This document shows, one piece after another, positions 21,608 through 47,309 of a stretch of DNA of 64,000 nucleotides. The notes beneath the pieces were generated by a model that saw only the letters and a list, made by a program, of their open reading frames with translations, had not been told where the DNA came from and searched no databases. A program made the position numbers and the translations under genes. Source of the stretch: Schmidtea polychroa (lineage: Eukaryota); contig CM097888.1 of the NCBI GenBank assembly GCA_044892525.1, positions 8,990,001 through 9,054,000 on the forward strand, in the 5' to 3' direction. Each line of letters starts with the position of its first letter. The stretch's first letter is position 1.

Positions 21608-24197
21608 TGTTGTACCCGGTAATTTAGCGGCTTTTGACATTCGATTAGAAACAGGAACACTTTCATTAAAATAGGTTATTGAATCCGCAAACTTTTCTTG
21701 CCTATCACACAAAAATAATGATGATTTCTTCAATGCAATTTTCCCAATTTTATTCATGGCTTAATTAAACGTAAATAATAAATTGAATTAATCCACTACA
21801 AGTTTTATTTTAAATTCCAAAATTTTTAATTTGAAATACAAAAATTTACAGATCTAAGTAAAACAAAAAAATATATCATTCGATAAAAAATAAACAGATT
21901 TTTAAAAATATATAATTTAAAAAGCTTAACGATTTTATAAAGTTCGCGTAAGAATTTCAAATAGTCAATTACTAATAAATAAATGCAAAATAAACAAATT
22001 TAGGTTTTTATATTATTGTTAGGATTTGTTCCGTATTTCGCGAATTGTAATGGATGAGGGTGTTGGTCTATGAGAGCCAACACTAAAACTATTGGGAGCC
22101 GTATACAGTTACTCTTGATCATGATAACATGGCATCGAATTTGCTTTACTCTTCTGAGATTGATTAATAGAGCCTGATTGATAAGTAGAAGTATTAGCTG
22201 ATCGCACGAATTTTGATTGACTGTTATTGTGTTCTGTTTGGTCCTTAGTCGCTGGTGACCGCGCATTTATATATATAATATAATATCGTATAATATAATA
22301 TAATATAGTATAATAGGTATATAGATATTGTTAAGGCCGTGTAACGGCTCACTACATCAGCCCCACGGGAAGTCGCGGAGCGCACAGGGACTCAAGAATA
22401 GAGATTGATGAAAGATCTACTAGAAACAAGATGTAAGTCGAAAAGTAGTGACAATTTATCAAAGGTAGATAGTGTCTAAAAAGGAAATCGGCGATTGATG
22501 AATTAATTGATCACATGGAATAAAGTTAAGTGAATTTCAGCATCAGATGTGTCAAATTTTCATTGGAATAGACTCTGGCAAGTCTTGGAGGTTTGGAAAT
22601 GTCTTCCCCAATTTGGCGCACCCAAATCTTATCACTATGTTTCACATTTTTCGCGGTTCGCTGCTTGTCGGGTTTCGAAACAATTGAGCGAAGATTTAGT
22701 GGATTTGTTGTTGCTGAATGTGTATTCAATGTAGCTAAATTTTCATCGCGTTGGTAGTTTGTGATCATGGTACGCGCGATTTCGTTTGAGTCCGTGGCCG
22801 GTTCTACTGAAAGGTTTTCGTTCGACGTAGTTGAAATGGGTTCGACTGAGACTTTCTCTAAATCAGAGTGAAGTTTGTCCTCGTCCACGTCATCAGAAAT
22901 CATAAAAGCCGGTTTAAGTCGGCACAAATTTATATTTTGGGTAACACCGTTAATAACGATGTGAGCATTGTTATCCTTAATGTCGATCAATTTGTAAGGC
23001 CCCGAATATCTCGGTTTGAGACCTGAATCCGTAATATTACGAAGATAAACGTGAGTTGCATCCTTGAAGGACTTTGGGACGTACGGTGTATATGAGGAAG
23101 CATAAGAAAACTGTGGGTTGCTATCGATCGAAAGAAAATGATCTCTAGCCATATCTAATTCCTCAAAGGTAGGAGCGTTATCAAAATCAACTAATTCGTT
23201 AGGTAACGATGTTGAAGAACCGAAAAGTAACTGTGCCGGTGTAGTTCCGGTAGTCCTGGAGGGTGTGTTACGCCAACCAAGAAGGACAAAAGGTAAAGCT
23301 TTAGTCCAATTAAGTCTCGATGAAAGTATTCCAAGAGAGGTCTTCAAAGTACGGTGAAATCTTTCGATCATGCCGTTTGTCTGAGGATGGTAAGCAGTTG
23401 AACGGAGGTGTTGTATACCGAGCTTTTCAGTTAGCTGTTGAAATAACTGGGATTCAAACTGAGATCCCCTGTCTGTGATTATTGATTTCGGAACACCGTA
23501 TCTAGAAATCCAATGTTGCAAAATTGAATTTGCTACAATTTCAGCAGAAATGTTTTTCAGAGGAATAACTTCAATGCAATTTTCCCAATTTTATTCATGG
23601 CTTAATTAAACGTAAATAATAAATTGAATTAATCCACTACAAGTTTTATTTTAAATTCCAAAATTTTTAATTTGAAATACAAAAATTTACAGATCTAAGT
23701 AAAACAAAAAAATATATCATTCGATAAAAAATAAACAGATTTTTAAAAATATATAATTTAAAAAGCTTAACGATTTTATAAAGTTCGCGTAAGAATTTCA
23801 AATAGTCAATTACTAATAAATAAATGCAAAATAAACAAATTTAGGTTTTTATATTATTGTTAGGATTTGTTCCGTATTTCGCGAATTGTAATGGATGAGG
23901 GTGTTGGTCTATGAGAGCCAACACTAAAACTATTGGGAGCCGTATACAGTTACTCTTGATCATGATAACATGGCATCGAATTTGCTTTACTCTTCTGAGA
24001 TTGATTAATAGAGCCTGATTGATAAGTAGAAGTATTAGCTGATCGCACGAATTTTGATTGACTGTTATTGTGTTCTGTTTGGTCCTTAGTCGCTGGTGAC
24101 CGCGCATTTATATATATAATATAATATCGTATAATATAATATAATATAGTATAATAGGTATATAGATATTGTTAAGGCCGTGTAACGGCTCACTACA
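21608..24197 (-). mobile_element. Ty3/gypsy LTR retrotransposon, internally deleted (5' LTR 24197-23569 truncated, integrase fragment, 3' LTR 22356-21608)
   Basis: TG...CA termini (minus strand TGTAGTG...CAACA); 5-bp TSD CTATG at 21603-21607 and 24198-24202. The LTR segments 21728-22356 and 23569-24197 appear identical (offset 1841). Confidence 0.95.
22526..23575 (-). pseudogene. Gypsy integrase fragment (rve core plus GPY/F module), 5'-truncated
   Basis: IEVIPLKNISAEIVANSILQHWISRYGVPKSIITDRGSQF...STAYHPQTNGMIERFHRTLK...LKPRYSGPY. The first catalytic D, the zinc finger, gag, protease, RT and RNase H are absent. Confidence 0.93.
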
Positions 24198-28340: not shown

Positions 28341-29582
28341 TTAAGAAATAAATTTGTTAATTTTATTTTCAATGGGAATCGAATTCGAAACATTTGGATA
28401 AATAAGATCGACGACCAAAGGATCTCTCAAAATGAAATTTTTAATAATGAATCTAAATCTCAAAATTGCGTAACGAGAAATATTTCGGAAAAATATTCTC
28501 CTCTCCAGTTTCCGATAGACGGAACAATATTTTTTTAACCGTTTTGATATATAGCGACTCGCGGGTGTCTTCGGTCTTTTCCGGTGGAAGAATTTCCTTC
28601 GCTTAGAGAACGGCAATTTGAACAGTAAGGAAATTAGGATGAAAAAGTTGTCGGAATGTGAACTTTGTTTCGGATTAAATGAATCCTTTAATCGATAATA
28701 GTTTCTTAATTTTTCATTGTTTAAATTGTTATTATTGTTTTGAATTGCGACTAACTTCACCAGCCGAGTACGGCCTTTATGGAAAGGATTCACTTTACTG
28801 CTCTTGAAGTTTAAGTTAATTTGTTTATATTTTAAAAGATCAACTACATCTCCGCAAGCATCTGTCCGCCGAGGGAAATATTCGGCAGAAATTCTTTCCT
28901 TTTCTTTATATATATCTTTATCGAAATATCTATTATGATGTTGCCTTATAGAAATCGCTATCGACGGCTTTAGTGAATTACAGAACCACGAAAAAGCTCT
29001 TAATATAGACTGTTTATCTCTACTAATAAACCTATATGCTCGACTATAATTTCCACTTCTCGAATAGAAACAATCGGATATGTCGACCTTTATGTTGAAC
29101 TTACATATCGTTGCATTTGTTATTCGATTCCTGTGTGATCGTGCACTTTCCAACATTAATTGAAACTTTTGCCCACTATTGTACCATCTATGCTTTATGC
29201 AATATTCCAGGAACAAAGCGCGATTCCCGATTTCATAAATTGGTATCCTATGGATCTCGATGAAATCCTGCATTGACATTGTCGTTTCCGGTACCCAAAA
29301 TGTATAATAGTAATAACCGGCTTCAATTTGCATTCCGATTTGATATCTGACCATTATGGAATTGTCAATTGTCATCTGACGATCCACGCCATAATCTTCG
29401 ACGTTTTCAAAATCTTTTTCAGATATTGATGATGTACTCGTAAAAGAATTAGGAGTCGTGGATTCAGCTCTGTCCTGAGATACATTAAATATCATTTCAT
29501 TCACAGAAACCTGGTGGGAATTCTCAGAAGAATCTAGACTACTTGAAGATATTCTTATAGGCTTGTAAAAGCACGAGCCCAT
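28341..29582 (-). CDS. Intronless 413-aa hypothetical protein with N-terminal MGSC acylation-like motif and a very basic C-terminus
   Basis: An uninterrupted 1.24-kb ORF in roughly 70% AT DNA is unlikely by chance. It starts gccATGG. No family is confidently recognised. Confidence 0.75.
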   Translation of the reverse strand: MGSCFYKPIRISSSSLDSSENSHQVSVNEMIFNVSQDRAESTTPNSFTSTSSISEKDFENVEDYGVDRQMTIDNSIMVRYQIGMQIEAGYYYYTFWVPETTMSMQDFIEIHRIPIYEIGNRALFLEYCIKHRWYNSGQKFQLMLESARSHRNRITNATICKFNIKVDISDCFYSRSGNYSRAYRFISRDKQSILRAFSWFCNSLKPSIAISIRQHHNRYFDKDIYKEKERISAEYFPRRTDACGDVVDLLKYKQINLNFKSSKVNPFHKGRTRLVKLVAIQNNNNNLNNEKLRNYYRLKDSFNPKQSSHSDNFFILISLLFKLPFSKRRKFFHRKRPKTPASRYISKRLKKYCSVYRKLERRIFFRNISRYAILRFRFIIKNFILRDPLVVDLIYPNVSNSIPIENKINKFIS

Positions 29583-31302
29583 GGCATTATAAGCATAAAA
29601 TAGACATTAAAAGGCGCATATATTCATTTGATTCTATTAACATTTATTACAAAATGCTGAAAGATTTTATACATTTTCAATCAATATTATCAAAATGTTT
29701 ATTATAATAAATAATTTTTATAGTTGTTCATGATTCAATTTTCTGACAATATCGTAAACTCTAAATGACGGGGGGAGGGGGTTAGGTTTATGTATAAAGC
29801 GTATGTATAAGGAAACTCACTTTTGGGGATATCCATTCTATAAAACCAAAAATACAATTGTCTGTCTGTTAAAGTAAATCTTCCCAAATAGTGAACAGTG
29901 GCAGTCACATTTGTACATGACATTATCACAGGCTAGAATTTTACAGTTGAGTTCTTCTCTTTAATTGTCAGCTGTATTTTAGAATGTGAAAAGTAAAGGA
30001 TCTCTAAACATTTTCAACATTGCTGATGATCAACAAGAGATTAAACATTGTATTTAGCCAAATATTGGAATAAATTTGTAATAATGCGATGATTAAAATT
30101 AAATATTATGAATAAATAATGAGTTTGAATCTGTCCCAGGCAAAGTCGAACAATAATGCTAGTTATACAAAATAAGGGATTATCCCATAAAAATGAATAG
30201 CTGTTTTGACATTCTAATTACTGAAATATTTTGTTAACATTTATAATGAATTAATTAAGTAAATTATAATATTTTGAGGCTCTTAGTGAATTTCAAAATT
30301 AAAAATCATTGATTTAACTCCAAAGCGTGCCTAGGTTAATAACAATAACAATATAAACTTTTATTGATCAACACAATTGATTACCAATTTATAGCAACAC
30401 CAATAATTCAACATTACAACTTTGAGCGCTTATTGAAACCCTTCAGGAGAAATAGCATGTTTGTAACACAACTCGGAATTCACAACGACTTAACTACTGT
30501 TTCTGTTCCTTTGAAATTACTTAATACTCGCAATTAAATAGTTTAATAATTTTTTCGAATTTCTTTTTTGACCTGACAACATTTTTATCCAATAATTCCA
30601 TATTTCACTTTGTAACCGCATTCGCGTATCTGTTTTCTCGTCCGTCTGTTTCTTTTTAAAATTGTGCTTGACTTTTCTTTACGGATTAATGTCTCCTTTT
30701 CTTCTTTTACATATTATTTCAACTTAAAAATTTTAAAAAATGTTATTTTTTTGACGTTACAGGTGAAAAATTTATTATTTTGGACAATTTATCGATATAA
30801 TTCCATTCTTCAATTTGTTTTTTTTGTTTCTCGGTCCTAATTTACACTTATTGATTAAGAACGACATTTTCATATTTCATTGTTTAATTTTATTGACTTT
30901 GTTATTTTCCTCTATTTCTTAATGTATTTTTCGCACTTTTATTCCTCAGCATTCTGAAACAACCCATTCTCCATTTCATACATTTCTCCATTGATTACTT
31001 TATTCATTTAATAATTATTTTATTTTATTATTTAGTTATCCTCCAAAATAATTAGTAAATGTTTTGATGCAATGACAACATTACAGTTTAATGCAACTGA
31101 ATCCAAATTAATTAATCATTATCTGTTATAAAAATAATTAAAAACATTAGCGATTTTATTATAGGAACAGGACGCAGGTCAAAGTTCATATGTCGCGCAT
31201 ATTTGAATAATATGTCCAAAGGTCACCCATTCATTTCAATCATACCAATGTTTATGTACAAATTTATATATAATTGAAGATTTGCTACAGATTTTATGAA
31301 AT

Positions 31303-33947
31303 ATGCTTTGGAACATTTTTATTATTTCACTTGCGGTGTCAAGTAAAATGAATTTGTTTTTTTTTCATTTTGAAAATCTTTTTTTATAAAACAGGTTTTA
31401 AAGTCAAGACTGAAAATTTGAATAATCAGCAAAAGCCTTCCGTTCTGATTATAGGTTTATAATTGGTCTTTGAGTATTATATGGAATTATATATAATTTA
31501 GGATCATCAGTACCAGCTCTAACTGCGGCTTTAGAACTCACGGATCGCAATATTTCGGTCACTCTTTTGTATTCTACCAATGAAATTGACAACCAAATAT
31601 CTCCTACAACGACTTCAGTAAAAAATGTCATCTATCGGTTACCTANNNNNNNNNNNNNNNNNNNNNNNNNNNNNNNNNNNNNNNNNNNNNNNNNNNNNNN
31701 NNNNNNNNNNNNNNNNNNNNNNNNNNNNNNNNNNNNNNNNNNNNNNNNNNNNNNNNNNNNNNNNNNNNNNNNNNNNNNNNNNNNNNNNNNNNNNNNNNNN
31801 NNNNNNNNNNNNNNNNNNNNNNNNNNNNNNNNNNNNNNNNNNNNNNNNNNNNNNNNNNNNNNNNNNNNNNNNNNNNNNNNNNNNNNNNNNNNNNNNNNNN
31901 NNNNNNNNNNNNNNNNAATAAACTTATATTTGCTTTTTCAAAGTTTCTATCGTTTATGAACAGTTGCAAAGCAATTCTCGTAAATATATTTTGAATTAAC
32001 CTAATATCTCATATATATATAAATATATAAATTTTTATTTTAAATTAGCAATTTTCGAAGGATCTGATTATACGAAGAAGTTATTTTCAAGATTTGGAAA
32101 TACGTTTTCTGTTCTAAACAAAATAGACCTACTGCTCAACAACAACAAGATTTTATCCATTTCGTCAAACGAATATGTAATGAGTAAGTTGAAATTGATT
32201 TAAATAATTTAATTAAAAATTTTTAAATATATTCTTTTAATCATTCCATTTTTGGCTAACTCGTAATATAAATTGAAAATTTAGGCGAATATTTTTAAAC
32301 AAATACAAATAAAATAATTAAATTATTAAAATATATCTTTCTAAATCAACCATATTTTACATAATAAAAAATTTAATTAAGTACATATATTAAAACAAAT
32401 AAAAATAATTAAATAAATAATAAAATTATTATAAATCTCCAAACAATTTTTTAAGAAAAATATTAATCTAAATTTAACAATTGCAAATTATTTCCGAATT
32501 CTCTACATTTCTTTTCTTTTTTCTTTTTTTAATTCCATTAGAATTTCAATTACTTCATGGTCGTTCGTTTTAAGTGTTCGCTCTTCAGATTCAAAGTGAA
32601 AATTACAAATGAATATTACAATAATATTACCAATTTCCCACTGAATTGTAATATAAATATAACTTTCTAATTAAAATGTTATACAATAATTTTTTATGTA
32701 GCTTTGGTCTTCAATGCATGGAAAACCGGATGCATTAGTTTTAAAAGTGTAACTGAAATCCATAAGGTAATTTCTGCAATCAAATGGTACAATCCGGTCA
32801 GTGACAAATTGATGTAAATGTTTAATTAACCCACTAAAAATCTGTACATAATGCTTTTCAGGTATTCCAACATTACGCTTGAGGAATTCGGAAAATTGAT
32901 AGGAGCACCTTCCGATTTCATGTCATGTTTCTTCAAATGGGCAATGACGGATCTCGGTTCACAAGTGGAAACTATCAATGCTGCTGATGCCATTTCTAGA
33001 ATGCAATTTTATTATGTAAATACAAAGAATGGATTAAGATCCTATCATGTTCGAAATCCGTATACTTCGAAAAATAATTCCAAACTTCTCGTTGATCAAA
33101 TAATTTCTCAATTGAAATTGAAAAATACAANNNNNNNNNNNNNNNNNNNNNNNNNNNNNNNNNNNNNNNNNNNNNNNNNNNNNNNNNNNNNNNNNNNNNN
33201 NNNNNNNNNNNNNNNNNNNNNNNNNNNNNNNNNNNNNNNNNNNNNNNNNNNNNNNNNNNNNNNNTAAGCCTTTTGCTGTAAATAATATATTTAATAGAAA
33301 TGAAAAATTTTCGATTATAAGATAGCTCTTGTCAATTTCTTAGATTTATTTTCTATTTTGAAAATGCCTTTTGATCTTCTCTTTTATTTCCTCTTTCTTA
33401 AAAATAATAATAAACTTTTTTTCTAAGGAATTAAAAATTAAATTTTTTTTTAATTAAATATACTCTAAAATTCAAATCGAAACACTAACAATTTTTAAAA
33501 ATTTTAAAGCTTCTATAATTACCTCATATAAACCTCTTTTAATAAATAATATCTTAAAATATTTATGAAATATAATTTCCAATTTAAATATTTTAAAAAA
33601 TGTTTCTATTTTGATTATTATTCCTAATGATCTTTTAAAAGTATATTTCCTTAAAATTTGATCTATTTTTCTATTTTATTTTAAATTATTATTTCTTAAA
33701 TCGATGTCTTTGATATATTTATTGATTTATAGTCTCCAAGCTCTTTTTAATAAATTCAATGGAAAAAAATCAGTGGTGAAATTGGAAAAAAAATTTCTTA
33801 TAATATTATTATTTTTTAATTTATTTTTTATTTTTAAAAGCTATTCTCAAGGTCAATAATGAAACTGATGATTTCATTGATCTCTTCTTTAGTGTTGAAT
33901 GTTGGCCGTCTGTTTATGATGAGAATGGCATCACTTTATAATAATAA

Positions 33948-34017
<70 letters not shown>

Positions 34018-37000
34018 TAGTAAAATAAAATGAAAATGATAAGTAAAAATAATATAAAGAAATTTAAAAAAGAAAATAAAGAATATGAAGAAAATTATCG
34101 GGAGTATGAAATCAACAAATTATATTGTAAATTTAAAATAATTTACATTGATAGGGAACATAAATAAAAGTAAAGAATACCTAAAATTAAATAACTCGAA
34201 GGTCAATTTCGATTAGCTAGTACATCTGGATTGAATGGCAGGCCATGGTCAACAAGACAAAATTATTTTCAGTTGTTGCGATCAATTTCCTGATTATCTT
34301 CACAGTGGACATTGATCGAAATTCTTAATGAAAAGGATAAAAAATAGAAAAGAGTGAGCGGGGAATTAGTTTAATTATAGCGATGGGAAGTGATACTAAG
34401 ACAGCCACTATCGAAGTCTGCTTGGAGTAATTATAACTCAATTAAACAATTGTAATTGCCCAAAGTAAATGAAATAGAGATTTTTCCCTATCAATTTTAG
34501 TATCAATATATTTCATGTATTGTTGGAAGTGAACCGTTATAGAGAGTATGAAATAAGTCAGAATATTAATTAACAAAAACAATTACTGACTTAGTTAATT
34601 CAACGAAAGAAAAAGAAAGGATTGAATTATGTTCAATCGTCATACGTTTTGTTTCAAGGAAAGTTGATAAGCTTAACTGATTATATTTGTTAATGAAGGT
34701 TGTAAGGAGAATATTTGAATCCGGTTTGTTGGTTGTTGAGAGGAGAATTTGATATTGATATTGTTGCTATATTAAAAAAACGGGTAGGACCTGATTATGG
34801 TAATAATCCTACAAAATTTCTTGATTAATTTAACAATTATAGCAAATATTCAATCGAATTGACCATTTCCAACATTATAAAACTCGTATGAAATTCATAA
34901 CTTTCTATGATGATATTTCATCGATTTAAACAATTAAATTATTTTTATCGCAAAAATTAAAAAAAAATTATTTTGGTTTAATATATAAATTTTGGAATAT
35001 AATATAAATATTTTTCATTAACAATCTTTATATTTTAATTCTAGATTTAAGCCGAATTATACATTGGAAGCGTTTTATGTTGATTCAGCCACCGGTAAGA
35101 TTCTGGGAGACATCAACAACAGAACCGTTCACTACGACTACATTATATTGGCAGACAACCTTGAAGAATCTCGGCGTATTTTATCCACCACTAAATCCTA
35201 CAATAGTGGAGATCCTAAAATATTTCTTCCATTGAAAAAAGCGCTCGACTCCATGAACCAATATTCAAATGCCTCGAATAATTTAGTAAGTAAATAGTTA
35301 ATTAAAGTTAAAAGAAAAATGTTTCTACTTTTTAGAGCATGAAATTATGGTTTTCTCACATAGATGGTGAAACCGAAAACCCGATATTAGAGATCACCAA
35401 TAGCCCTTATCCTTACAGCATCCAGTCAATACGACAAATTCATAAATTATCTGGAAGCGGAAACAATGGAACTATTTTAGAACTTATCGTTACCGGATGT
35501 ACTTCCACATCAAATGTCAATTGGTATAAGGTAATTTGTTTATTTATCTTTTGTAATCCTATTTTTTGGATAACACATTNNNNNNNNNNNNNNNNNNNNN
35601 NNNNNNNNNNNNNNNNNNNNNNNNNNNNNNNNNNNNNNNNNNNNNNNNNNNNNNNNNNNNNNNNNNNNNNNNNNNNNNNNNNNNNNNNNNNNNNNNNNNN
35701 NNNNNNNNNNNNNNNNNNNNNNNNNNNNNNNNNNNNNNNNNNNNNNNNNNNNNNNNNNNNNNNNNNNNNNNNNNNNNNNNNNNNNNNNNNNNNNNNNNNN
35801 NNNNNNNNNNNNNNNNNNNNNNNNNNNNNNNNNNNNNNNNNNNNNNNNNNNNNNNNNNNNNNNNNNNNNNNNNNNNNNNNNNNNNNNNNNNNNNNNNNNN
35901 NNNNNNNNNNNNNNNNNNNNNNNNNNNNNNNNNNNNNNNNNTGTTATGTTTCTTTACTTTTTCTTCTTTTTGCGGCACCGATTGTATCACTTAATTTTTT
36001 ACTATTTTACTAGTTTAAATTAATACATATTTATAAATTAATTACCTTTTGTTAACCTGAAATTAAATATAGAATAATCAAATATTATATTTATATATTT
36101 TATTTAAACAATACATTAATACTCTGTCACGTAAATAAATGAGATTGGATAGCTTGTTAGCAAGAAATTTGTTGATTAAATAAATAGGACACTAGTAATT
36201 CAGAAAAATAAGAAATGAAAAGTTGACTTAATAAAACAGAAACTTTAATTTATGGAATTGAAAATGAGAACTTACACTTAAAAATTAATTTTTGAAATTG
36301 AAAACGCAACAAATTTTAACATTTGGCTAATTCTGTCAAATTCATACACAAACACAAAGTTATCATTATTAATTAAACAATATCAATATAGCCCTCGAAT
36401 TCATATAAAAGAAGCAAACTACGCTCTAGTACAGCGACGGCGAGCCTATGACCCACACAACGAATTCAAACGATGCACAAGTTGTTTTGGTTTTTAATTA
36501 TAAAATAATAATCATGTGAATTTGTTCGAATATATATCTAATTAATATATAATAAATGAAATCATATTATATTTACATGAATTTTTGTTAAGTTTTTAAT
36601 AACTAAAATAATACTTGACCCGTAGGTTGATATTTCAAAAAATAAATTCAATTGTGACTCCCTTGTCAAAAAAGCCATCGCTGCTATAGTGCAAAAATAT
36701 TTGAAAAATATTATTTGAATATGAATGATGATATTTTTTAATATTAGTTTTACATTTGTGAGAATAGAAACAGAAATTAATACAATCGTGATAATTTTGC
36801 ACATAAAATGATTACAGAAATAAAGGTATACCACAGAGTTTGTAAATAACGTACGTATCAAGGCAATAACGCAATGAAAATTAAACACACTTTTTCCAGA
36901 ATATCTTATCTGCATCGCGTTGCCAAAAGAAAATAAATAATTAGATTAATTAAGCCATTCAGAAAGTTATTATTAATTACTTATGTTTTATATGAAATTA

Positions 37001-38319
37001 AATTTTTAACTAAATTCAGAAACAAGTTCCATTTTTACCCAACATAATACAAATCACATGAGATTATGTAAACATCCAGGAGACAATGTCGTCAAAATAA
37101 CTTAAAAATATACACATCCGTATTATAAATAATATACAAAATAACATCAAGTGAATAATTGCATATTAATAAATTTATATTTCAATAACAAAATCTATTT
37201 CATTAACTTATTGTATTTCGGGAAATCAACCAATGATATCATTAGTTATCGCCGGTCTTTTTAATTTTAAGTTTCGAAATTCTATAACACAAATATTTCC
37301 TTCCCATTCAAATGACCTGATAGCACAATAAAATTTTTTATAAAGGATTCGGTTACTATGTCTTTATCCTTTCGATCAGATGAAGCAGCGCTACCACCGC
37401 TCAAATTACAAGCTGAATTTGTAGGTTTTTAGAATGAAGATTTCTTATAATAATTTACTTGTTCTAATTCTTCCTATTTTTTTACTGCTTTTATCGATCA
37501 AAATATATTATAAAAAAATATTTATTAATTAATTGTGTTGGAATAAATTAATCGTTGATTTATACTTTATATTCTACAATAATTGATCTAAATAAAACAA
37601 GTCCTAATATGGTTAATAAACAGCAAAAGAGCTCAATATGCAATTTTTTCCAAATTACTATCTAAAAGTACACAACATTTTTTTACAGAAAAGAAATGTG
37701 ATGAAATAAATTAAGCTTCTTCAAAGGATTTTCAAAATCACTTGAAAAAGGCTGTTCCGAAAATTATGAATATCAAAAAAAACATCGATATATTTACTGA
37801 TTCTTAGTAAATGTTTTAATTAATATAATGCCAATTAATCATTAAGTAATCATTAATTAATCATCGACCCTTACAAGGCTTATAATATGTTTCTATTTTC
37901 TTCAACTAGCTCCTTCAATTCAAAAAATGTTTTTAATCATATCTGAGATCTTTAAAGTGCAGACATCAAATAAAAAGTTAAAGATCTATATTGCCAAAAG
38001 GTTTCCTTATAAAATGCTGTTAAAGAAATTTATATTTTAGATCATAACAGAATTAAAAAATATATTTCCTGAAATGGGAAACTACGATTTAGAACGCTAT
38101 AGATATGATCCGATTGATTTGGGAGTTTCCATGGATAAAAAATATGGAAATAACAGATTGTCGACTTCAAGCATCATCAAATTTGGAATACCTAATCTCA
38201 TCCTTGGCGGAGACTGGGTGGACATAGGCGACTCTATTGCGAATGATTTAGAAAAGTCAATTATCATAGGAACTAAAGCCGCTAATGATGTTGTCAAATA
38301 TTTAACTTATAAACATTAG
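31303..38319 (+). CDS. Secreted flavoprotein-fold protein, CrtU (carotenoid phi-ring/isorenieratene synthase)/amine-oxidase-like; exons 31303-31342, 31395-31454, 31502-(gap), 32049-32183, 32702-32813, 32862-(gap), 35045-35285, 35336-35530, 38041-38319
   Basis: Phase-consistent GT-AG introns of 52, 47, 48 and 50 nt plus larger ones. Motifs occur in the CrtU/ZDS order: SVLIIGSSVPALTAALELTDRNISVTLLY (Rossmann beta-alpha-beta), NAADAISRMQFYYVNTKNGL, YDYIILADNLEESRRIL, MKLWFS...GTILELIV, IITELKNIFPEM, IPNLILGGDWV...LEKSIIIGTKAANDVV. The N-terminus MLWNIFIISLAVSSFKVKT is signal-peptide-like. Two exon ends fall in N-gaps. Confidence 0.8.
33952..34012. repeat. (TA)n microsatellite
   Basis: About 30 TA units read directly. 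Confidence 0.98.
34200..34800 (+). mobile_element. Highly decayed hAT transposase relic inside an intron of the CrtU-like gene
   Basis: The fragment ELCSIVIRFVSRK resembles the hAT E.LSI.vRyV motif. The region has many stops. Confidence 0.3.
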
Positions 38320-44926: not shown

Positions 44927-47309
44927 CCGTATTTTAGCGCATATAACGCGCGCGTTATACGCATTTTTACAAACCGCGCACCCCCCCCCCCCCCATGCGC
45001 GGTATCTGTGGGTGCGCGCTTTATGATTTATATTTTACACGTGGCGGCATTGCCAGTGGAAATATTTTTATGATGTGACAGTAACCCTACCATCGGTTTT
45101 AATGTTACGTTTGATTGCAACCAGATTTACTTTTAGTTAAACAAATTATTTTATTTTTATAATATTAAATAATAATTTGCTATTTATTTCTGTTATGTAG
45201 CAATGTTTCAGATACCGAGTTTGTGTTTAATATGGATCGAATGGCGCCAGCCGGAGTTGCATTGTTCGTATTGACACGTCAGGAAAACAAATAGAAATAA
45301 AGAAATTATAAATTTTAATGTTCACGTTATCTTATATTAAATTTTTTTATAGATATAATAAATAAAACTTCGATGTTTTTTTATTTATTTTTGATCCCAC
45401 ATGTCATTTCAGTAACTTGTTGCTGTTTTAATCTCCGCCATCCTCAAGCTCTTCTTCGCCATCACTCTCCTGGAAACCTTCGAAGCTCTCGTCATCTGAA
45501 CTGGCCTGAAACATGTCCATGACTCGCTGTAGGCGCTCTTCTTCGATTGCCACATCATTTCCCTCTGCTTTTGATGCTTCACTGTCTCCCTCTCCATCTG
45601 TCGAGTCATTGGCGCCAACATCGGGAACGTTACTGGGCATAATTCCACACTTCTTGAATCCATTTGTGATTGTTGTCACCTTCACTTTCTCCCATGCAGT
45701 TATGACCCACTTGCATACTTCAACGTATGTGGCACGGCGTTGTCTACCAGCTGGTGTGTATGTGTGGGACCCAGTTGAAATCCACTTGTCCCACTCCTCA
45801 CGAACAAACGTCTTGAATGGTCGATTTACAGCGACATCCAGTGGCTGAAGCTTGCAAGTGAGGCCACCCGGGATGACGGCGATATGGGCGCCCGCTGCGT
45901 TTATCTTCTTTTGAACAGATGACTCTTTGTGAGCTGTCATGGCATCAAAAACAAGGAGAGATTTCTTTTTGAAAAATCTGCCTTTCCTGTTGCGGAAGCA
46001 TCTGTCTGTCCAAATCCCCATGACGTCCGTGTTCATCCAACCCTTTTTATTGCATGTAACGACAACACCACTTGGAAGCTGTTCACGTGGCATTGTCGCA
46101 CGTTTGAAGATAAGCATTGGCTTGAGTTTCTGGCCTCCAGCGGTGCAGGCTAAGACGACGGTAAACGAAGTTCTTTCATTTCCTGTCGTAGCAACAGCGA
46201 CCGTCTTAACCCCGACTTCAGCAACTGATCGCGTTGGAGGGATATCAAAGACCATGGGCACTTCGTCCATTTTGATGACGTCATTTGGTGAGAGATCGTG
46301 TTGGCTGATTTCCTTATGAACAAATTCTCTGAAATCATCCAACTTCTTTTCCCAATCATCCGGAAGTCGCTGGCCGACTGTTGTTCGAGCACGCATCGAC
46401 AAATTATTGCGCCGCATAAATTTGTAAACCCAATTGTACGAGCCACCTTTGAAATCATCTAACTTCATTTCAACGGCCAACAATCTTGCTTTTGCCTTAA
46501 TTGCCACCGTCGATACAGCTCGATTATTCTCTCTCTGAGCCAAAATCCACTTCACCAAATTCGCCTCCAGATGTGGCCATCTCGCCTTGCCGCCACGCCT
46601 TGCTCTTTTTCTCGGATTCATACTTTCCAGCTCTGTCTCGTCCTTCCTCCACTCTCGAACCGACGTCTCACCAACACCAAACTCCCGACCCGCCGCTCTA
46701 TTTCCCTTCTCCTTCGCATACTTAATCACCTGAAGCTTAAAATCAGCTGTGTAAGACTTTCTTTTAGGCATATCGAATAATTTATGATGGGTTTTAAAAT
46801 ATCATGAGTTTATATTGTGCTATGAGAACAGAGAATTCGTTGTTTTATTTTGTCAGCCGTTGGAGTAAGACCAATAGTTTTAAACGGATCTAACCACGTG
46901 GCAATTTATCAGGCTGACGACGTCATCACACGCCGACAACCCAGCCAATAAAATTAAACGAATTTCACACGTGGTTTGTTACATCGCTGAACTTTAAATT
47001 TATGACTCGGCTTGTTTTGTCGCGGAGTCTCGTGATTATTAATACGTGATGCAAACAGCAACAATAAACAAACACGGAATGTAACGCTGTTTAATATTGA
47101 GATTATGAATTATTTTACAAACAAAATTTATGGAGAATAATTAATAAGTATACTAAACCGCATTTTTGGAAATTTACCAGCATCAGGTAGGTGCGCGCTA
47201 TAGGCCAGGGCGCGTTACACAAATTTGTATTTACACATACAATAAAATCCGCGCGGTATACAGGGATACGCGTTATACGCGGGGGCGCGCTATATCCGCT
47301 AAAATACGG
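44927..47309 (-). mobile_element. pogo-superfamily DD35D transposon (Passer/POGK-like), full length 2383 bp, TA TSD
   Basis: TIRs CCGTATTTTAGCG(C/G)ATATA at 44927 and 47309, both flanked by TA, enclosing an intact transposase ORF. Confidence 0.95.
45428..46771 (-). CDS. pogo transposase, 447 aa (Brinker-type HTH, CENP-B HTH, DDE_1), uninterrupted
   Basis: KSYTADFKLQVIKYA (BrkDBD); WPHLEANLVKWI...FKGGSYNWVYKFMRRNNLSMR (HTH_Tnp_Tc5); catalytic KMDE, LVFDAMTAH and LQPLD with 35-aa D-D spacing. Confidence 0.95.
   Translation of the reverse strand: MPKRKSYTADFKLQVIKYAKEKGNRAAGREFGVGETSVREWRKDETELESMNPRKRARRGGKARWPHLEANLVKWILAQRENNRAVSTVAIKAKARLLAVEMKLDDFKGGSYNWVYKFMRRNNLSMRARTTVGQRLPDDWEKKLDDFREFVHKEISQHDLSPNDVIKMDEVPMVFDIPPTRSVAEVGVKTVAVATTGNERTSFTVVLACTAGGQKLKPMLIFKRATMPREQLPSGVVVTCNKKGWMNTDVMGIWTDRCFRNRKGRFFKKKSLLVFDAMTAHKESSVQKKINAAGAHIAVIPGGLTCKLQPLDVAVNRPFKTFVREEWDKWISTGSHTYTPAGRQRRATYVEVCKWVITAWEKVKVTTITNGFKKCGIMPSNVPDVGANDSTDGEGDSEASKAEGNDVAIEEERLQRVMDMFQASSDDESFEGFQESDGEEELEDGGD

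What the first reader, a model, noticed from the sequence alone, without database searches (positions are those of the whole stretch)
31303..31645. The CrtU-like protein looks like a secreted pseudo-enzyme: signal peptide gained, FAD motifs lost
Seen in sequence: the N-terminus MLWNIFIISLAVSSFKVKT is signal-peptide-like, with an in-frame stop just upstream of the ATG. The Rossmann GxGxxG is replaced by GSSVPA, the acidic residue ending beta-2 is replaced by Y (VTLLYS), and the following xGG motif is missing (NEIDNQI). The surrounding residues (SVLIIG..ALTAALEL..R.ISVTLL) are kept. Established: these motifs bind the FAD pyrophosphate and ribose in this superfamily. Inference: the fold has been repurposed as a non-catalytic extracellular protein, for example a carotenoid/lipid carrier or a mucus or adhesive component.
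Basis: partly seen in the sequence, partly recalled or inferred. Interest (0 to 1): 0.7.

Follow-up and report, generated by a model that had tools for sequence, protein, structure and literature searches.

The report
CrtU-like gene with degenerate FAD motif
An intron-containing animal gene related to bacterial aromatic-carotenoid synthases (CruE/CrtU) really has lost the three N-terminal motifs that normally hold FAD and begins with a short signal-peptide-like segment, but whether it is a secreted, cofactor-free "pseudo-enzyme" is still unproven.

Summary
An in-frame TGA lies 6 nt upstream of the ATG. Aligned to 29 cyanobacterial CruE proteins, GxGxxG reads GSSVPA, the acidic residue ending beta-2 is Tyr, and the GG motif reads DN. 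The flanking residues are kept.

The family call is supported only at full length. Single exons hit nothing in Pfam, NCBIfam or PDB. The spliced model scores 18.6 bits (E 3e-8) against a CruE profile, and shuffled controls reach at most 4.2 bits. CruE fills the top five places among 67 cyanobacterial amine-oxidase-locus ORFs, and a weakly supported tree places the gene beside CruE.

The gene is not decaying. All visible exons are open, and the last exon is under purifying selection in three other sequences.

- CruE proteins already carry an N-terminal twin-arginine export or anchor segment, so the signal need not be a gain.
- The C-terminal FAD motif (GDW...E...G..AA) is strictly conserved.
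- No orthologue N-terminus or RNA read could be obtained.

The gene lacks CruE's Rieske insertion.

Verdict: a real, unusual variant. A pseudo-enzyme is plausible (about 0.45). Secretion is inferred only. The scan noted the same gene as s1-217336.

The parts
31297..31299 (+). In-frame TGA stop, 6 nt upstream of the start codon
31303..31342 (+). Exon 1: start codon and the signal-peptide-like hydrophobic segment (residues 1-13, plus the first base of residue 14)
   Evidence: donor GTAAAA
31343..31394 (+). Intron 1 (52 nt, GT...AG, 15% GC)
31395..31454 (+). Exon 2: linker FKVKTENLNNQQKP, Rossmann strand beta-1 (SVLII), and the first base of the only glycine kept from the motif
31455..31501 (+). 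Intron 2 (47 nt, GT...AG, 19% GC)
31502..31645 (+). Exon 3, which runs into masked N. It holds the degenerate dinucleotide-binding motif GSSVPA (to 31518), helix ALTAALEL, strand ISVTLL, Tyr in place of the acidic residue (31570-31572), and IDNQ in place of lGGk (31585-31596)
   Evidence: Atlas features resemble FAD Rossmann N-termini
32049..32183 (+). Exon 4 (model)
   Evidence: in-frame splice, acceptor TTAG, donor GTAAGT
32702..32786 (+). Exon 5 (model; the donor GTACAA is the least certain junction)
32862..33130 (+). Exon 6 (runs into masked N): substrate-domain segment, collinear with CruE and with the ~500-aa family
35045..35285 (+). Exon 7: contains ...VHYDYIILAD and runs unbroken across the place where CruE carries its Rieske [2Fe-2S] insertion
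35336..35530 (+). Exon 8 (model)
38041..38319 (+). Last exon with stop codon: conserved C-terminal FAD-proximal motif NLILGGDW (GGDW at 38206-38217), LEKS (Glu at 38251-38253) and G..AAN

Best explanation
The stretch is the 5' end of a real gene with at least 9 exons (31303-38319, about 500 residues) in an AT-rich animal genome. The gene belongs to a small family, conserved in flatworm-type sequences, that derives from the CruE/CrtU-like 'GDW' branch of the flavin amine-oxidase / phytoene-desaturase superfamily.

Compared with its bacterial relatives the protein differs in three ways:
- It has no Rieske iron-sulfur insertion.
- Its N-terminal ADP-binding beta-alpha-beta unit has lost two of the three glycines, the ribose-binding acidic residue and the GG motif.
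- It starts with a short eukaryote-style hydrophobic segment that should direct it to the ER and secretory pathway.

Most likely it no longer holds FAD in the canonical way. It would then act as a non-redox protein, binding or carrying a hydrophobic ligand or playing a structural role, inside the secretory pathway or outside the cell.

Shown: the gene structure from sequence, the motif losses, the family relationship, and purifying selection on the last exon. Inferred: loss of FAD binding, cleavage of the signal, secretion, and any ligand.
For: - Splice model: canonical GT-AG introns and open exons, with exon GC 34.8% against intron GC 18.6%.
- Motif replacements appear in a significant alignment to CruE. 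All 29 CruE and every sampled amine-oxidase ORF keep the signature.
- Family relationship: collinear tblastn hits with E 0.002-0.008. The CruE profile scores 18.6 bits, E 2.8e-8, against at most 4.2 bits in 500 shuffles, while a PDS profile scores -1.7 bits. The top five phmmer hits are all CruE. Profile-profile comparison of the last exon gives probability 93% against CruE and 95% against the ~500-aa family. A tree places the gene beside CruE with SH-aLRT 89.
- No Rieske-like exon was found, and exon 7 is unbroken across the insertion site.
- The N-terminus has 11 uncharged, mostly hydrophobic residues followed by A-V-S-S.
- The gene is kept by selection. Three other sequences share the last exon at 48-80% identity. 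DNA similarity stops at the exon edges, and pN is 0.27-0.33 against pS 0.73-0.82.
- Runs guessed to be RNA hold 15-20% of the words of a stretch that is 22% exon.
Against: - The C-terminal FAD-proximal motif (N-L, D-W, L-E, G, A-A) is invariant in four flatworm-type sequences and in CruE. That is what a working flavoenzyme would show.
- The third glycine is also Ala in a bacterial relative that still matches NAD_binding_8 (Rufibacter protein), so that one change means little.
- No signal-peptide predictor, structure model or FAD docking could be run on the spliced protein.
- The hydrophobic stretch is short and has no basic n-region.
- Sequons are not enriched, and cysteines are few.
- No orthologue N-terminus was found, so constraint on GSSVPA is unknown.
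- The exon junctions are not confirmed by reads.
Confidence: 0.45

Rival explanations
1. It is still a flavoenzyme. FAD, or another dinucleotide, is held in a non-canonical way, mainly by the conserved C-terminal motif and the intact fold. The N-terminal hydrophobic segment anchors the enzyme to the ER or another membrane, as the twin-arginine segment is expected to do in CruE. The enzyme would act on a hydrophobic substrate such as a dietary carotenoid or isoprenoid.
For: - The GDW...LE...G..AA motif is invariant across four flatworm-type sequences and CruE.
- There is strong purifying selection on that exon.
- The first glycine and the whole helix and strand pattern of the Rossmann unit are kept.
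- GxGxxA occurs in a bacterial relative.
- CruE relatives carry an N-terminal anchor or export segment.
Against: - The central glycine of GxGxxG, the acidic residue and the GG motif are all replaced together.
- None of the 29 CruE or other sampled relatives lacks any of them.
- The Rieske insertion present in every CruE sampled is missing.
Confidence: 0.3
2. It is a gene-model artefact. The true mRNA uses another first or third exon, hidden in the masked runs or not recognised, which supplies a normal GxGxxG...E...GG. One candidate is an internal GTATTC donor just before the Tyr codon, or an upstream exon that skips exon 1.
For: - No reads could be laid.
- The mask starts right after exon 3.
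- An out-of-frame ATG lies 7 nt upstream of the chosen start.
- A GT lies at the Leu-Tyr codons.
Against: - Exon 3 aligns without gaps to CruE from beta-1 through the position of the GG motif and on to ...fkm/YRL.
- No GxGxx[GA] exon exists anywhere in the unmasked window.
- Only about 5 residues are missing between exon 3 and exon 4 by comparison with CruE, which leaves no room for a second Rossmann exon.
- The second genomic copy encodes the same exon 3 protein and has identical DNA in the compared stretch that includes exons 1-3.
Confidence: 0.1
3. It is a decaying pseudogene, a relic of a transferred or ancestral desaturase gene in which the FAD motifs are simply eroding.
For: - Several catalytic motifs are lost at once.
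- Each exon on its own falls below every Pfam or NCBIfam threshold.
Against: - About 480 visible codons in nine exons have no stop or frameshift, in a 30% GC genome where open frames are short.
- All splice sites are intact.
- The last exon is under purifying selection in three other sequences.
- Two near-identical copies exist.
Confidence: 0.05

Closest known systems
CruE, the cyanobacterial beta-carotene desaturase/methyltransferase (chi-ring synthase; sll0254 type). It is the counterpart of CrtU in green sulfur bacteria (PMC7395447) and is described as containing a Rieske 2Fe-2S centre (PMC6553663)
   Same: - It gives one of the two best pairwise scores, the higher profile score of the two nearest families, and is the sister group in the tree.
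- Matches are collinear at the Rossmann unit, the mid region, the ...DYxILAxD strand and the C-terminal GDW...E...G..AAN motif.
- Both have an N-terminal hydrophobic targeting segment ahead of the Rossmann strand.
   Different: - The window gene has no Rieske insertion.
- GxGxxG, Glu and GG are lost.
- It has no twin-arginine motif.
- It is about 500 rather than 645-680 residues long.
- It has spliceosomal introns.
- Identity is only about 21%.
CrtU (phi-ring synthase of green sulfur bacteria and actinobacteria)
   Same: From general knowledge, it is a CruE homologue without the cyanobacterial features.
   Different: It was not compared here, because no CrtU sequence was available through the tools. 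The label 'CrtU-like' therefore rests on CruE.
Uncharacterised cyanobacterial amine-oxidase family of about 502-512 residues (GAGWAGLGATYHL...; loci L215-L221). It has no NCBIfam equivalog, and its best partial hits are HpnE, ZDS and PDS
   Same: - The length is the same, and it has no Rieske domain.
- It gives the longest alignment to the spliced model (294 columns, E 7.5e-6) and to the last-exon profile (76 columns, probability 95%).
- It gives the best single phmmer score, 22.5 bits.
   Different: - It has an intact FAD signature and no N-terminal hydrophobic segment.
- In the tree it is the next group out from CruE plus the window gene.
Plant phytoene desaturase PDS (PDB 5MOG) and the Pfam family Amino_oxidase PF01593
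   Same: It shares the overall superfamily. 5MOG is the nearest solved structure to CruE. The C-terminal motif aligns at the homologous place.
   Different: - The PDS profile gives no significant score (-1.7 bits).
- The window exons do not reach the Pfam threshold.
Rab GDI / REP (general knowledge, not tested here)
   Same: This is a precedent for this kind of FAD-binding fold being kept as a cofactor-free lipid- or prenyl-binding protein.
   Different: It is an unrelated branch, cytosolic, and has no sequence similarity to the window gene.
Secreted flavoenzymes with a signal peptide ahead of the Rossmann fold, such as L-amino-acid oxidases (general knowledge; PDB examples listed)
   Same: They have a signal peptide followed directly by an amine-oxidase fold. 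A signal does not therefore argue against FAD.
   Different: They keep GxGxxG, Glu and GG.

Membership tests
Pfam Amino_oxidase (PF01593) | Score above the gathering threshold (19.8 bits) | tested here: not met
   Single exons give no hit. The locus is not among the 20 genome matches at E<=10. The spliced protein could not be submitted, because no reference exists for it.
CruE/CrtU-like amine oxidases | Collinear full-length similarity, specific to this branch | tested here: met
   - CruE profile: 18.6 bits, E 2.8e-8, with shuffles at most 4.2 bits; PDS profile: -1.7 bits.
- The top five of 67 ORFs are CruE.
- Sister to CruE with SH-aLRT 89, on a long branch.
CruE/CrtU-like amine oxidases | N-terminal ADP-binding signature GxGxxG ... 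acidic residue ... GG | tested here: not met
   The window gene has GSSVPA, Tyr and DN at the aligned positions. The signature is present in 29 of 29 CruE proteins.
CruE/CrtU-like amine oxidases | C-terminal motif NL..aGDW ... (M/L)E ... G..AAN | tested here: met
   The motif is invariant in the window, P0004, P0001, P0002 and two CruE proteins. hhalign gives probability 93%, E 2.9e-7.
CruE (cyanobacterial type) | Rieske [2Fe-2S] domain inserted before the ...aDyyIlAtD strand | tested here: not met
   Exon 7 is unbroken across the site. No window piece matches that part of the CruE profile within the gene. CruE has a Rieske domain by Pfam.
CruE (cyanobacterial type) | Twin-arginine N-terminal signal or anchor | tested here: not met
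   There is no RR in residues 1-30 of the window protein. 28 of 29 CruE proteins have SRRxxLK. The window protein has a plain hydrophobic segment instead.
CruE/CrtU-like amine oxidases | Desaturase/methyltransferase activity on beta-carotene | not testable with these tools
   This needs enzyme or complementation assays.
Eukaryotic secretory proteins (cleavable signal peptide) | N-terminal h-region of at least 7-8 hydrophobic residues, followed by small residues at -3 and -1 | tested here: inconclusive
   A heuristic check only. The maximum mean hydropathy is 2.4-2.7 over 9-11 residues, and A-V-S-S follows. There is no basic n-region, no predictor was available, and sequons are not enriched.

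The most novel reading that the evidence does not exclude
A bacterial-type aromatic-carotenoid synthase gene (CruE/CrtU lineage) became resident in flatworm genomes and acquired introns. It lost both redox cofactor sites: the Rieske insertion and the ADP-binding motif for FAD. It has since been kept by selection as a secreted, cofactor-free binder or carrier of carotenoids or other isoprenoid lipids.
Probability: 0.3. Interest if true: 0.75.

Novelty: new variant of a known kind. Interest (0 to 1): 0.55.

Why it matters
CruE/CrtU-type enzymes are known from bacteria, where they make aromatic carotenoids that are used as geochemical biomarkers. The literature searches made here found no report of a conserved, intron-bearing relative in an animal.

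If the protein has given up FAD and the Rieske centre but kept the fold under selection, it would be a clear example of an enzyme scaffold turned into a non-redox protein in an animal. It could also be a route by which flatworms handle dietary carotenoids or other lipids.

If it still binds FAD, it would show that the supposedly essential central glycine, acidic residue and GG motif can all be dispensed with in this fold. Either outcome can be tested with one recombinant protein.

Tried and rejected
- Pfam, NCBIfam and PDB sequence searches with single exons gave nothing significant.
- Searches of the window's own genome for PF01593 and HpnE did not pick up the locus.
- The exhaustive profile-free search with the last exon gave only two fragment homologues and one spurious repeat protein. 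The word-indexed search added P0004.
- Word-indexed searches with exon 3 and exon 6 found no candidates.
- Scans of bacterial genome contigs and of metagenome contigs for relatives of exon 3 and of the last exon found none. No contig was on record for P0004. The contigs of P0001 and P0002 are 735 and 1030 nt and hold only the last exon. Orthologue N-termini could therefore not be examined.
- tblastn against plasmids gave one weak hit, a Rufibacter FAD-dependent oxidoreductase.
No letters of 33801-33844 were sent to any database or collection search afterwards. Three local scripts read the whole window file offline.
- The second genomic copy is unmasked where the window reads N. Those letters were neither read nor used. 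Only flanking identity and coordinates were computed.
- Literature searches for CrtU-like or phytoene-desaturase-like genes in planarians found nothing relevant.
- Rejected: a paralogue with an intact Rossmann motif in the same genome. Only the two near-identical copies exist.
- Rejected: a hidden Rieske exon.
Full report
**Setting.** The window is G000:C4:8990001-9054000 of a 781-Mb genome in 1012 contigs. It has 30% GC and six N runs. The region is eukaryotic: short ORF pieces on the + strand are joined by GT-AG introns. Transposon-type ORFs lie elsewhere in the window. The genome's size and composition, together with the flatworm-like homologue fragments, suggest a freshwater planarian. The tools code the organism's name, so I did not verify this.

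**The observation.**
- The ATG is at 31303, preceded by an in-frame TGA at 31297-31299.
- Exon 1 is 31303-31342, exon 2 is 31395-31454, and exon 3 starts at 31502 and runs to 31645, where a masked run begins.
- Introns 1 and 2 are 52 and 47 nt, GT...AG, with 15-19% GC, against 32-39% GC in the exons.
- No other exon with hydrophobic residues plus GxGxx[GA] exists in any frame of the unmasked window.
- The rest of the gene can be followed in frame through exons at 32049-32183, 32702-32786, 32862-33130, 35045-35285, 35336-35530 and 38041-38319.
- This gives about 480 visible codons without a stop. Three short gaps fall in or near masked runs. The gene extent agrees with the scan's other note on this gene (s1-217336).

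**What family it is.**
- Taken one exon at a time the protein is unrecognisable. There are no significant hits in Pfam, NCBIfam or PDB, and the locus does not appear in genome-wide searches for PF01593 or HpnE.
- Language-model features gave leads only. The last exon resembles Amino_oxidase C-terminal fragments (0.93), and exon 3 resembles FAD Rossmann N-terminal fragments (0.88-0.91).
- The link came from searching a profile of the last exon against cyanobacterial genomes. The weak hits fell in 646-671-residue proteins with Amino_oxidase plus Rieske domains. This is the CruE type, described in the literature as the beta-carotene desaturase/methyltransferase of cyanobacteria, counterpart of CrtU, with a Rieske centre (PMC7395447, PMC6553663).
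- tblastn of two CruE proteins against the window gives four collinear same-strand matches at exon 3, exon 6, exon 7 and the last exon. E is 0.002-0.008 for the two ends.
- A profile of 29 CruE orthologues scores the spliced model at 18.6 bits, E 2.8e-8 for one comparison. The best of 500 shuffles reaches 4.2 bits. A profile of 60 phytoene desaturases scores -1.7 bits.
- Among 67 ORFs from amine-oxidase loci of five cyanobacteria, the top five phmmer hits are all CruE, with E from 7e-7 to 4e-4.
- A wider search found a second near family: proteins of about 502-512 residues without a Rieske domain and without an NCBIfam equivalog. Its pairwise and profile scores (best 22.5 bits by phmmer; 16.7 bits by profile) are similar to CruE's. 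It also gives the longest profile alignment: 294 columns for the spliced model and 76 columns for the last exon, with probability 95%.
- A quick maximum-likelihood tree puts the window protein beside CruE (SH-aLRT 89), with the ~500-residue family next (SH-aLRT 80). The branch is long, at 3.4 changes per column, and the best identity is 21%.
- 'CrtU-like' is therefore a fair label. Strictly, it means the CruE/CrtU-like GDW branch. Bona fide CrtU was not available for comparison.

**The motifs.** In the profile alignment the CruE consensus vvvGaGlaGlacayelsqrGfkvtllekspqlGGki faces SVLIIGSSVPALTAALELTDRNISVTLLYSTNEIDNQI.
- Only the first glycine of GxGxxG is kept. The central glycine is Ser and the third is Ala.
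- The acidic residue that ends beta-2 is Tyr.
- GG is Asp-Asn.
- All 29 CruE proteins and all sampled amine oxidases keep the signature.
- One bacterial relative (Rufibacter, 753 residues) has GxGxxA and still matches NAD_binding_8, so the third-position change alone is not telling.
- That these motifs bind the pyrophosphate and ribose of FAD is established knowledge for this fold.
- The C-terminal FAD-proximal motif is fully kept. N-L, D-W, L-E, G and A-A are invariant in the window, in three homologues and in CruE.
- The Rieske insertion that every CruE carries is absent. Exon 7 runs without a break from ...GKILGD... to ...VHYDYIILAD, and nothing in the gene matches that part of the profile.

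**The N-terminal segment.**
- Residues 2-12 are uncharged and mostly hydrophobic, with mean hydropathy 2.4-2.7. A-V-S-S follows, which fits the -3/-1 rule.
- The stretch is too short for a typical transmembrane helix, so a cleavable signal is the likelier reading. No predictor could be run.
- 28 of 29 CruE proteins start with SRRxxLK plus a hydrophobic stretch about 25-35 residues before the same Rossmann strand. From general knowledge, this is a twin-arginine signal of the kind Rieske proteins use as an export signal or anchor.
- If the gene descends from a CruE-like ancestor, an N-terminal targeting segment is inherited in kind, not gained. If it descends from the ~500-residue family, which has none, it was gained. 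The data do not decide between these.
- Sequons (8 against 7.7 expected) and cysteines (3) say nothing about secretion.

**Is it alive?**
- The exhaustive search of 1.84 billion representatives with the last exon found two homologous ORFs (58% and 53% identity) on short AT-rich genomic contigs from other samples. A third, 81% identical, came from the word-indexed search.
- DNA similarity to the window stops at the exon's edges. Synonymous sites are saturated (pS 0.73-0.82) while pN is 0.27-0.33. The family is therefore under purifying selection.
- The genome holds a second, inverted copy 1.2 Mb away with 99.9-100% identical DNA, and no other paralogue.
- Four runs guessed to be RNA hold 15-20% of the sampled words of a stretch that is 22% exon.

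**Reading.** The gene is real and the motif loss is real and exceptional for its family. A canonical FAD desaturase/methyltransferase role is unlikely, since both the ADP-binding motifs and the Rieske domain are gone. The best single explanation is a cofactor-free, non-redox protein routed into the secretory pathway (0.45). The conserved C-terminal motif keeps alive a non-canonical flavoenzyme anchored at a membrane (0.30). A wrong exon model (0.10) and a pseudogene (0.05) are less likely, for the reasons given under the rival explanations.

**Limits and compliance.**
- N runs were left as they are.
- The unmasked second copy was not read at the corresponding places. Only flanking identity and coordinates were computed.
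Three local scripts read the whole window file offline.
- The spliced protein has no reference, so it was used only inside scripts. Structure prediction and family scans on the full length were therefore left out.

Noticed in passing
window 31296-31298: An out-of-frame ATG lies 7 nt upstream of the main start. In the spliced mRNA it would open a 17-codon uORF overlapping the start codon. The main ATG has the better context (A at -3).
   Followed up: partly
G000:C4:10234123-10240788 (minus strand); loci L002, L007: A second, inverted copy of the whole gene lies about 1.2 Mb away, with 99.9-100% identical DNA including introns. It is either a recent segmental duplication or an assembly duplicate. 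It is not masked there, and the places that are N in the window were not read.
   Followed up: partly
L139-L167 (cyanobacterial CruE loci): 28 of 29 CruE ORFs begin with a twin-arginine motif (SRRxxLK) plus a hydrophobic stretch ahead of the FAD Rossmann strand. This suggests Tat-dependent export or anchoring of this carotenoid enzyme.
   Followed up: partly
L215-L221 (cyanobacterial genomes G484, G502, G504, G536, G602, G476, G488): A conserved amine-oxidase family of about 502-512 residues (GAGWAGLGATYHL...) has no NCBIfam equivalog. It scores below cut-off on HpnE, ZDS and PDS. It is the second-nearest relative of the window gene.
   Followed up: partly
G000:C1:61374308-61375597 and G000:C3:64850331-64851719: Two apparently intronless, full-length Amino_oxidase ORFs (444 and 482 residues in open frame) stand out in a genome whose other amine-oxidase genes match exon by exon.
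   Followed up: no
window 45431-46771 (-) and 22529-23521 (-): An intact-looking Tc5/pogo-type DDE transposase ORF (447 residues; DDE_1 E 3e-28) and a retroviral-type integrase fragment.
   Followed up: partly
window 28344-29582 (-): A 413-residue open frame directly upstream of the gene, on the opposite strand, has no Pfam match. That is unusually long for this AT-rich genome.
   Followed up: partly
window about 33950-34010: A (TA)n microsatellite lies inside the roughly 1.8-kb intron between exon 6 and exon 7.
   Followed up: no
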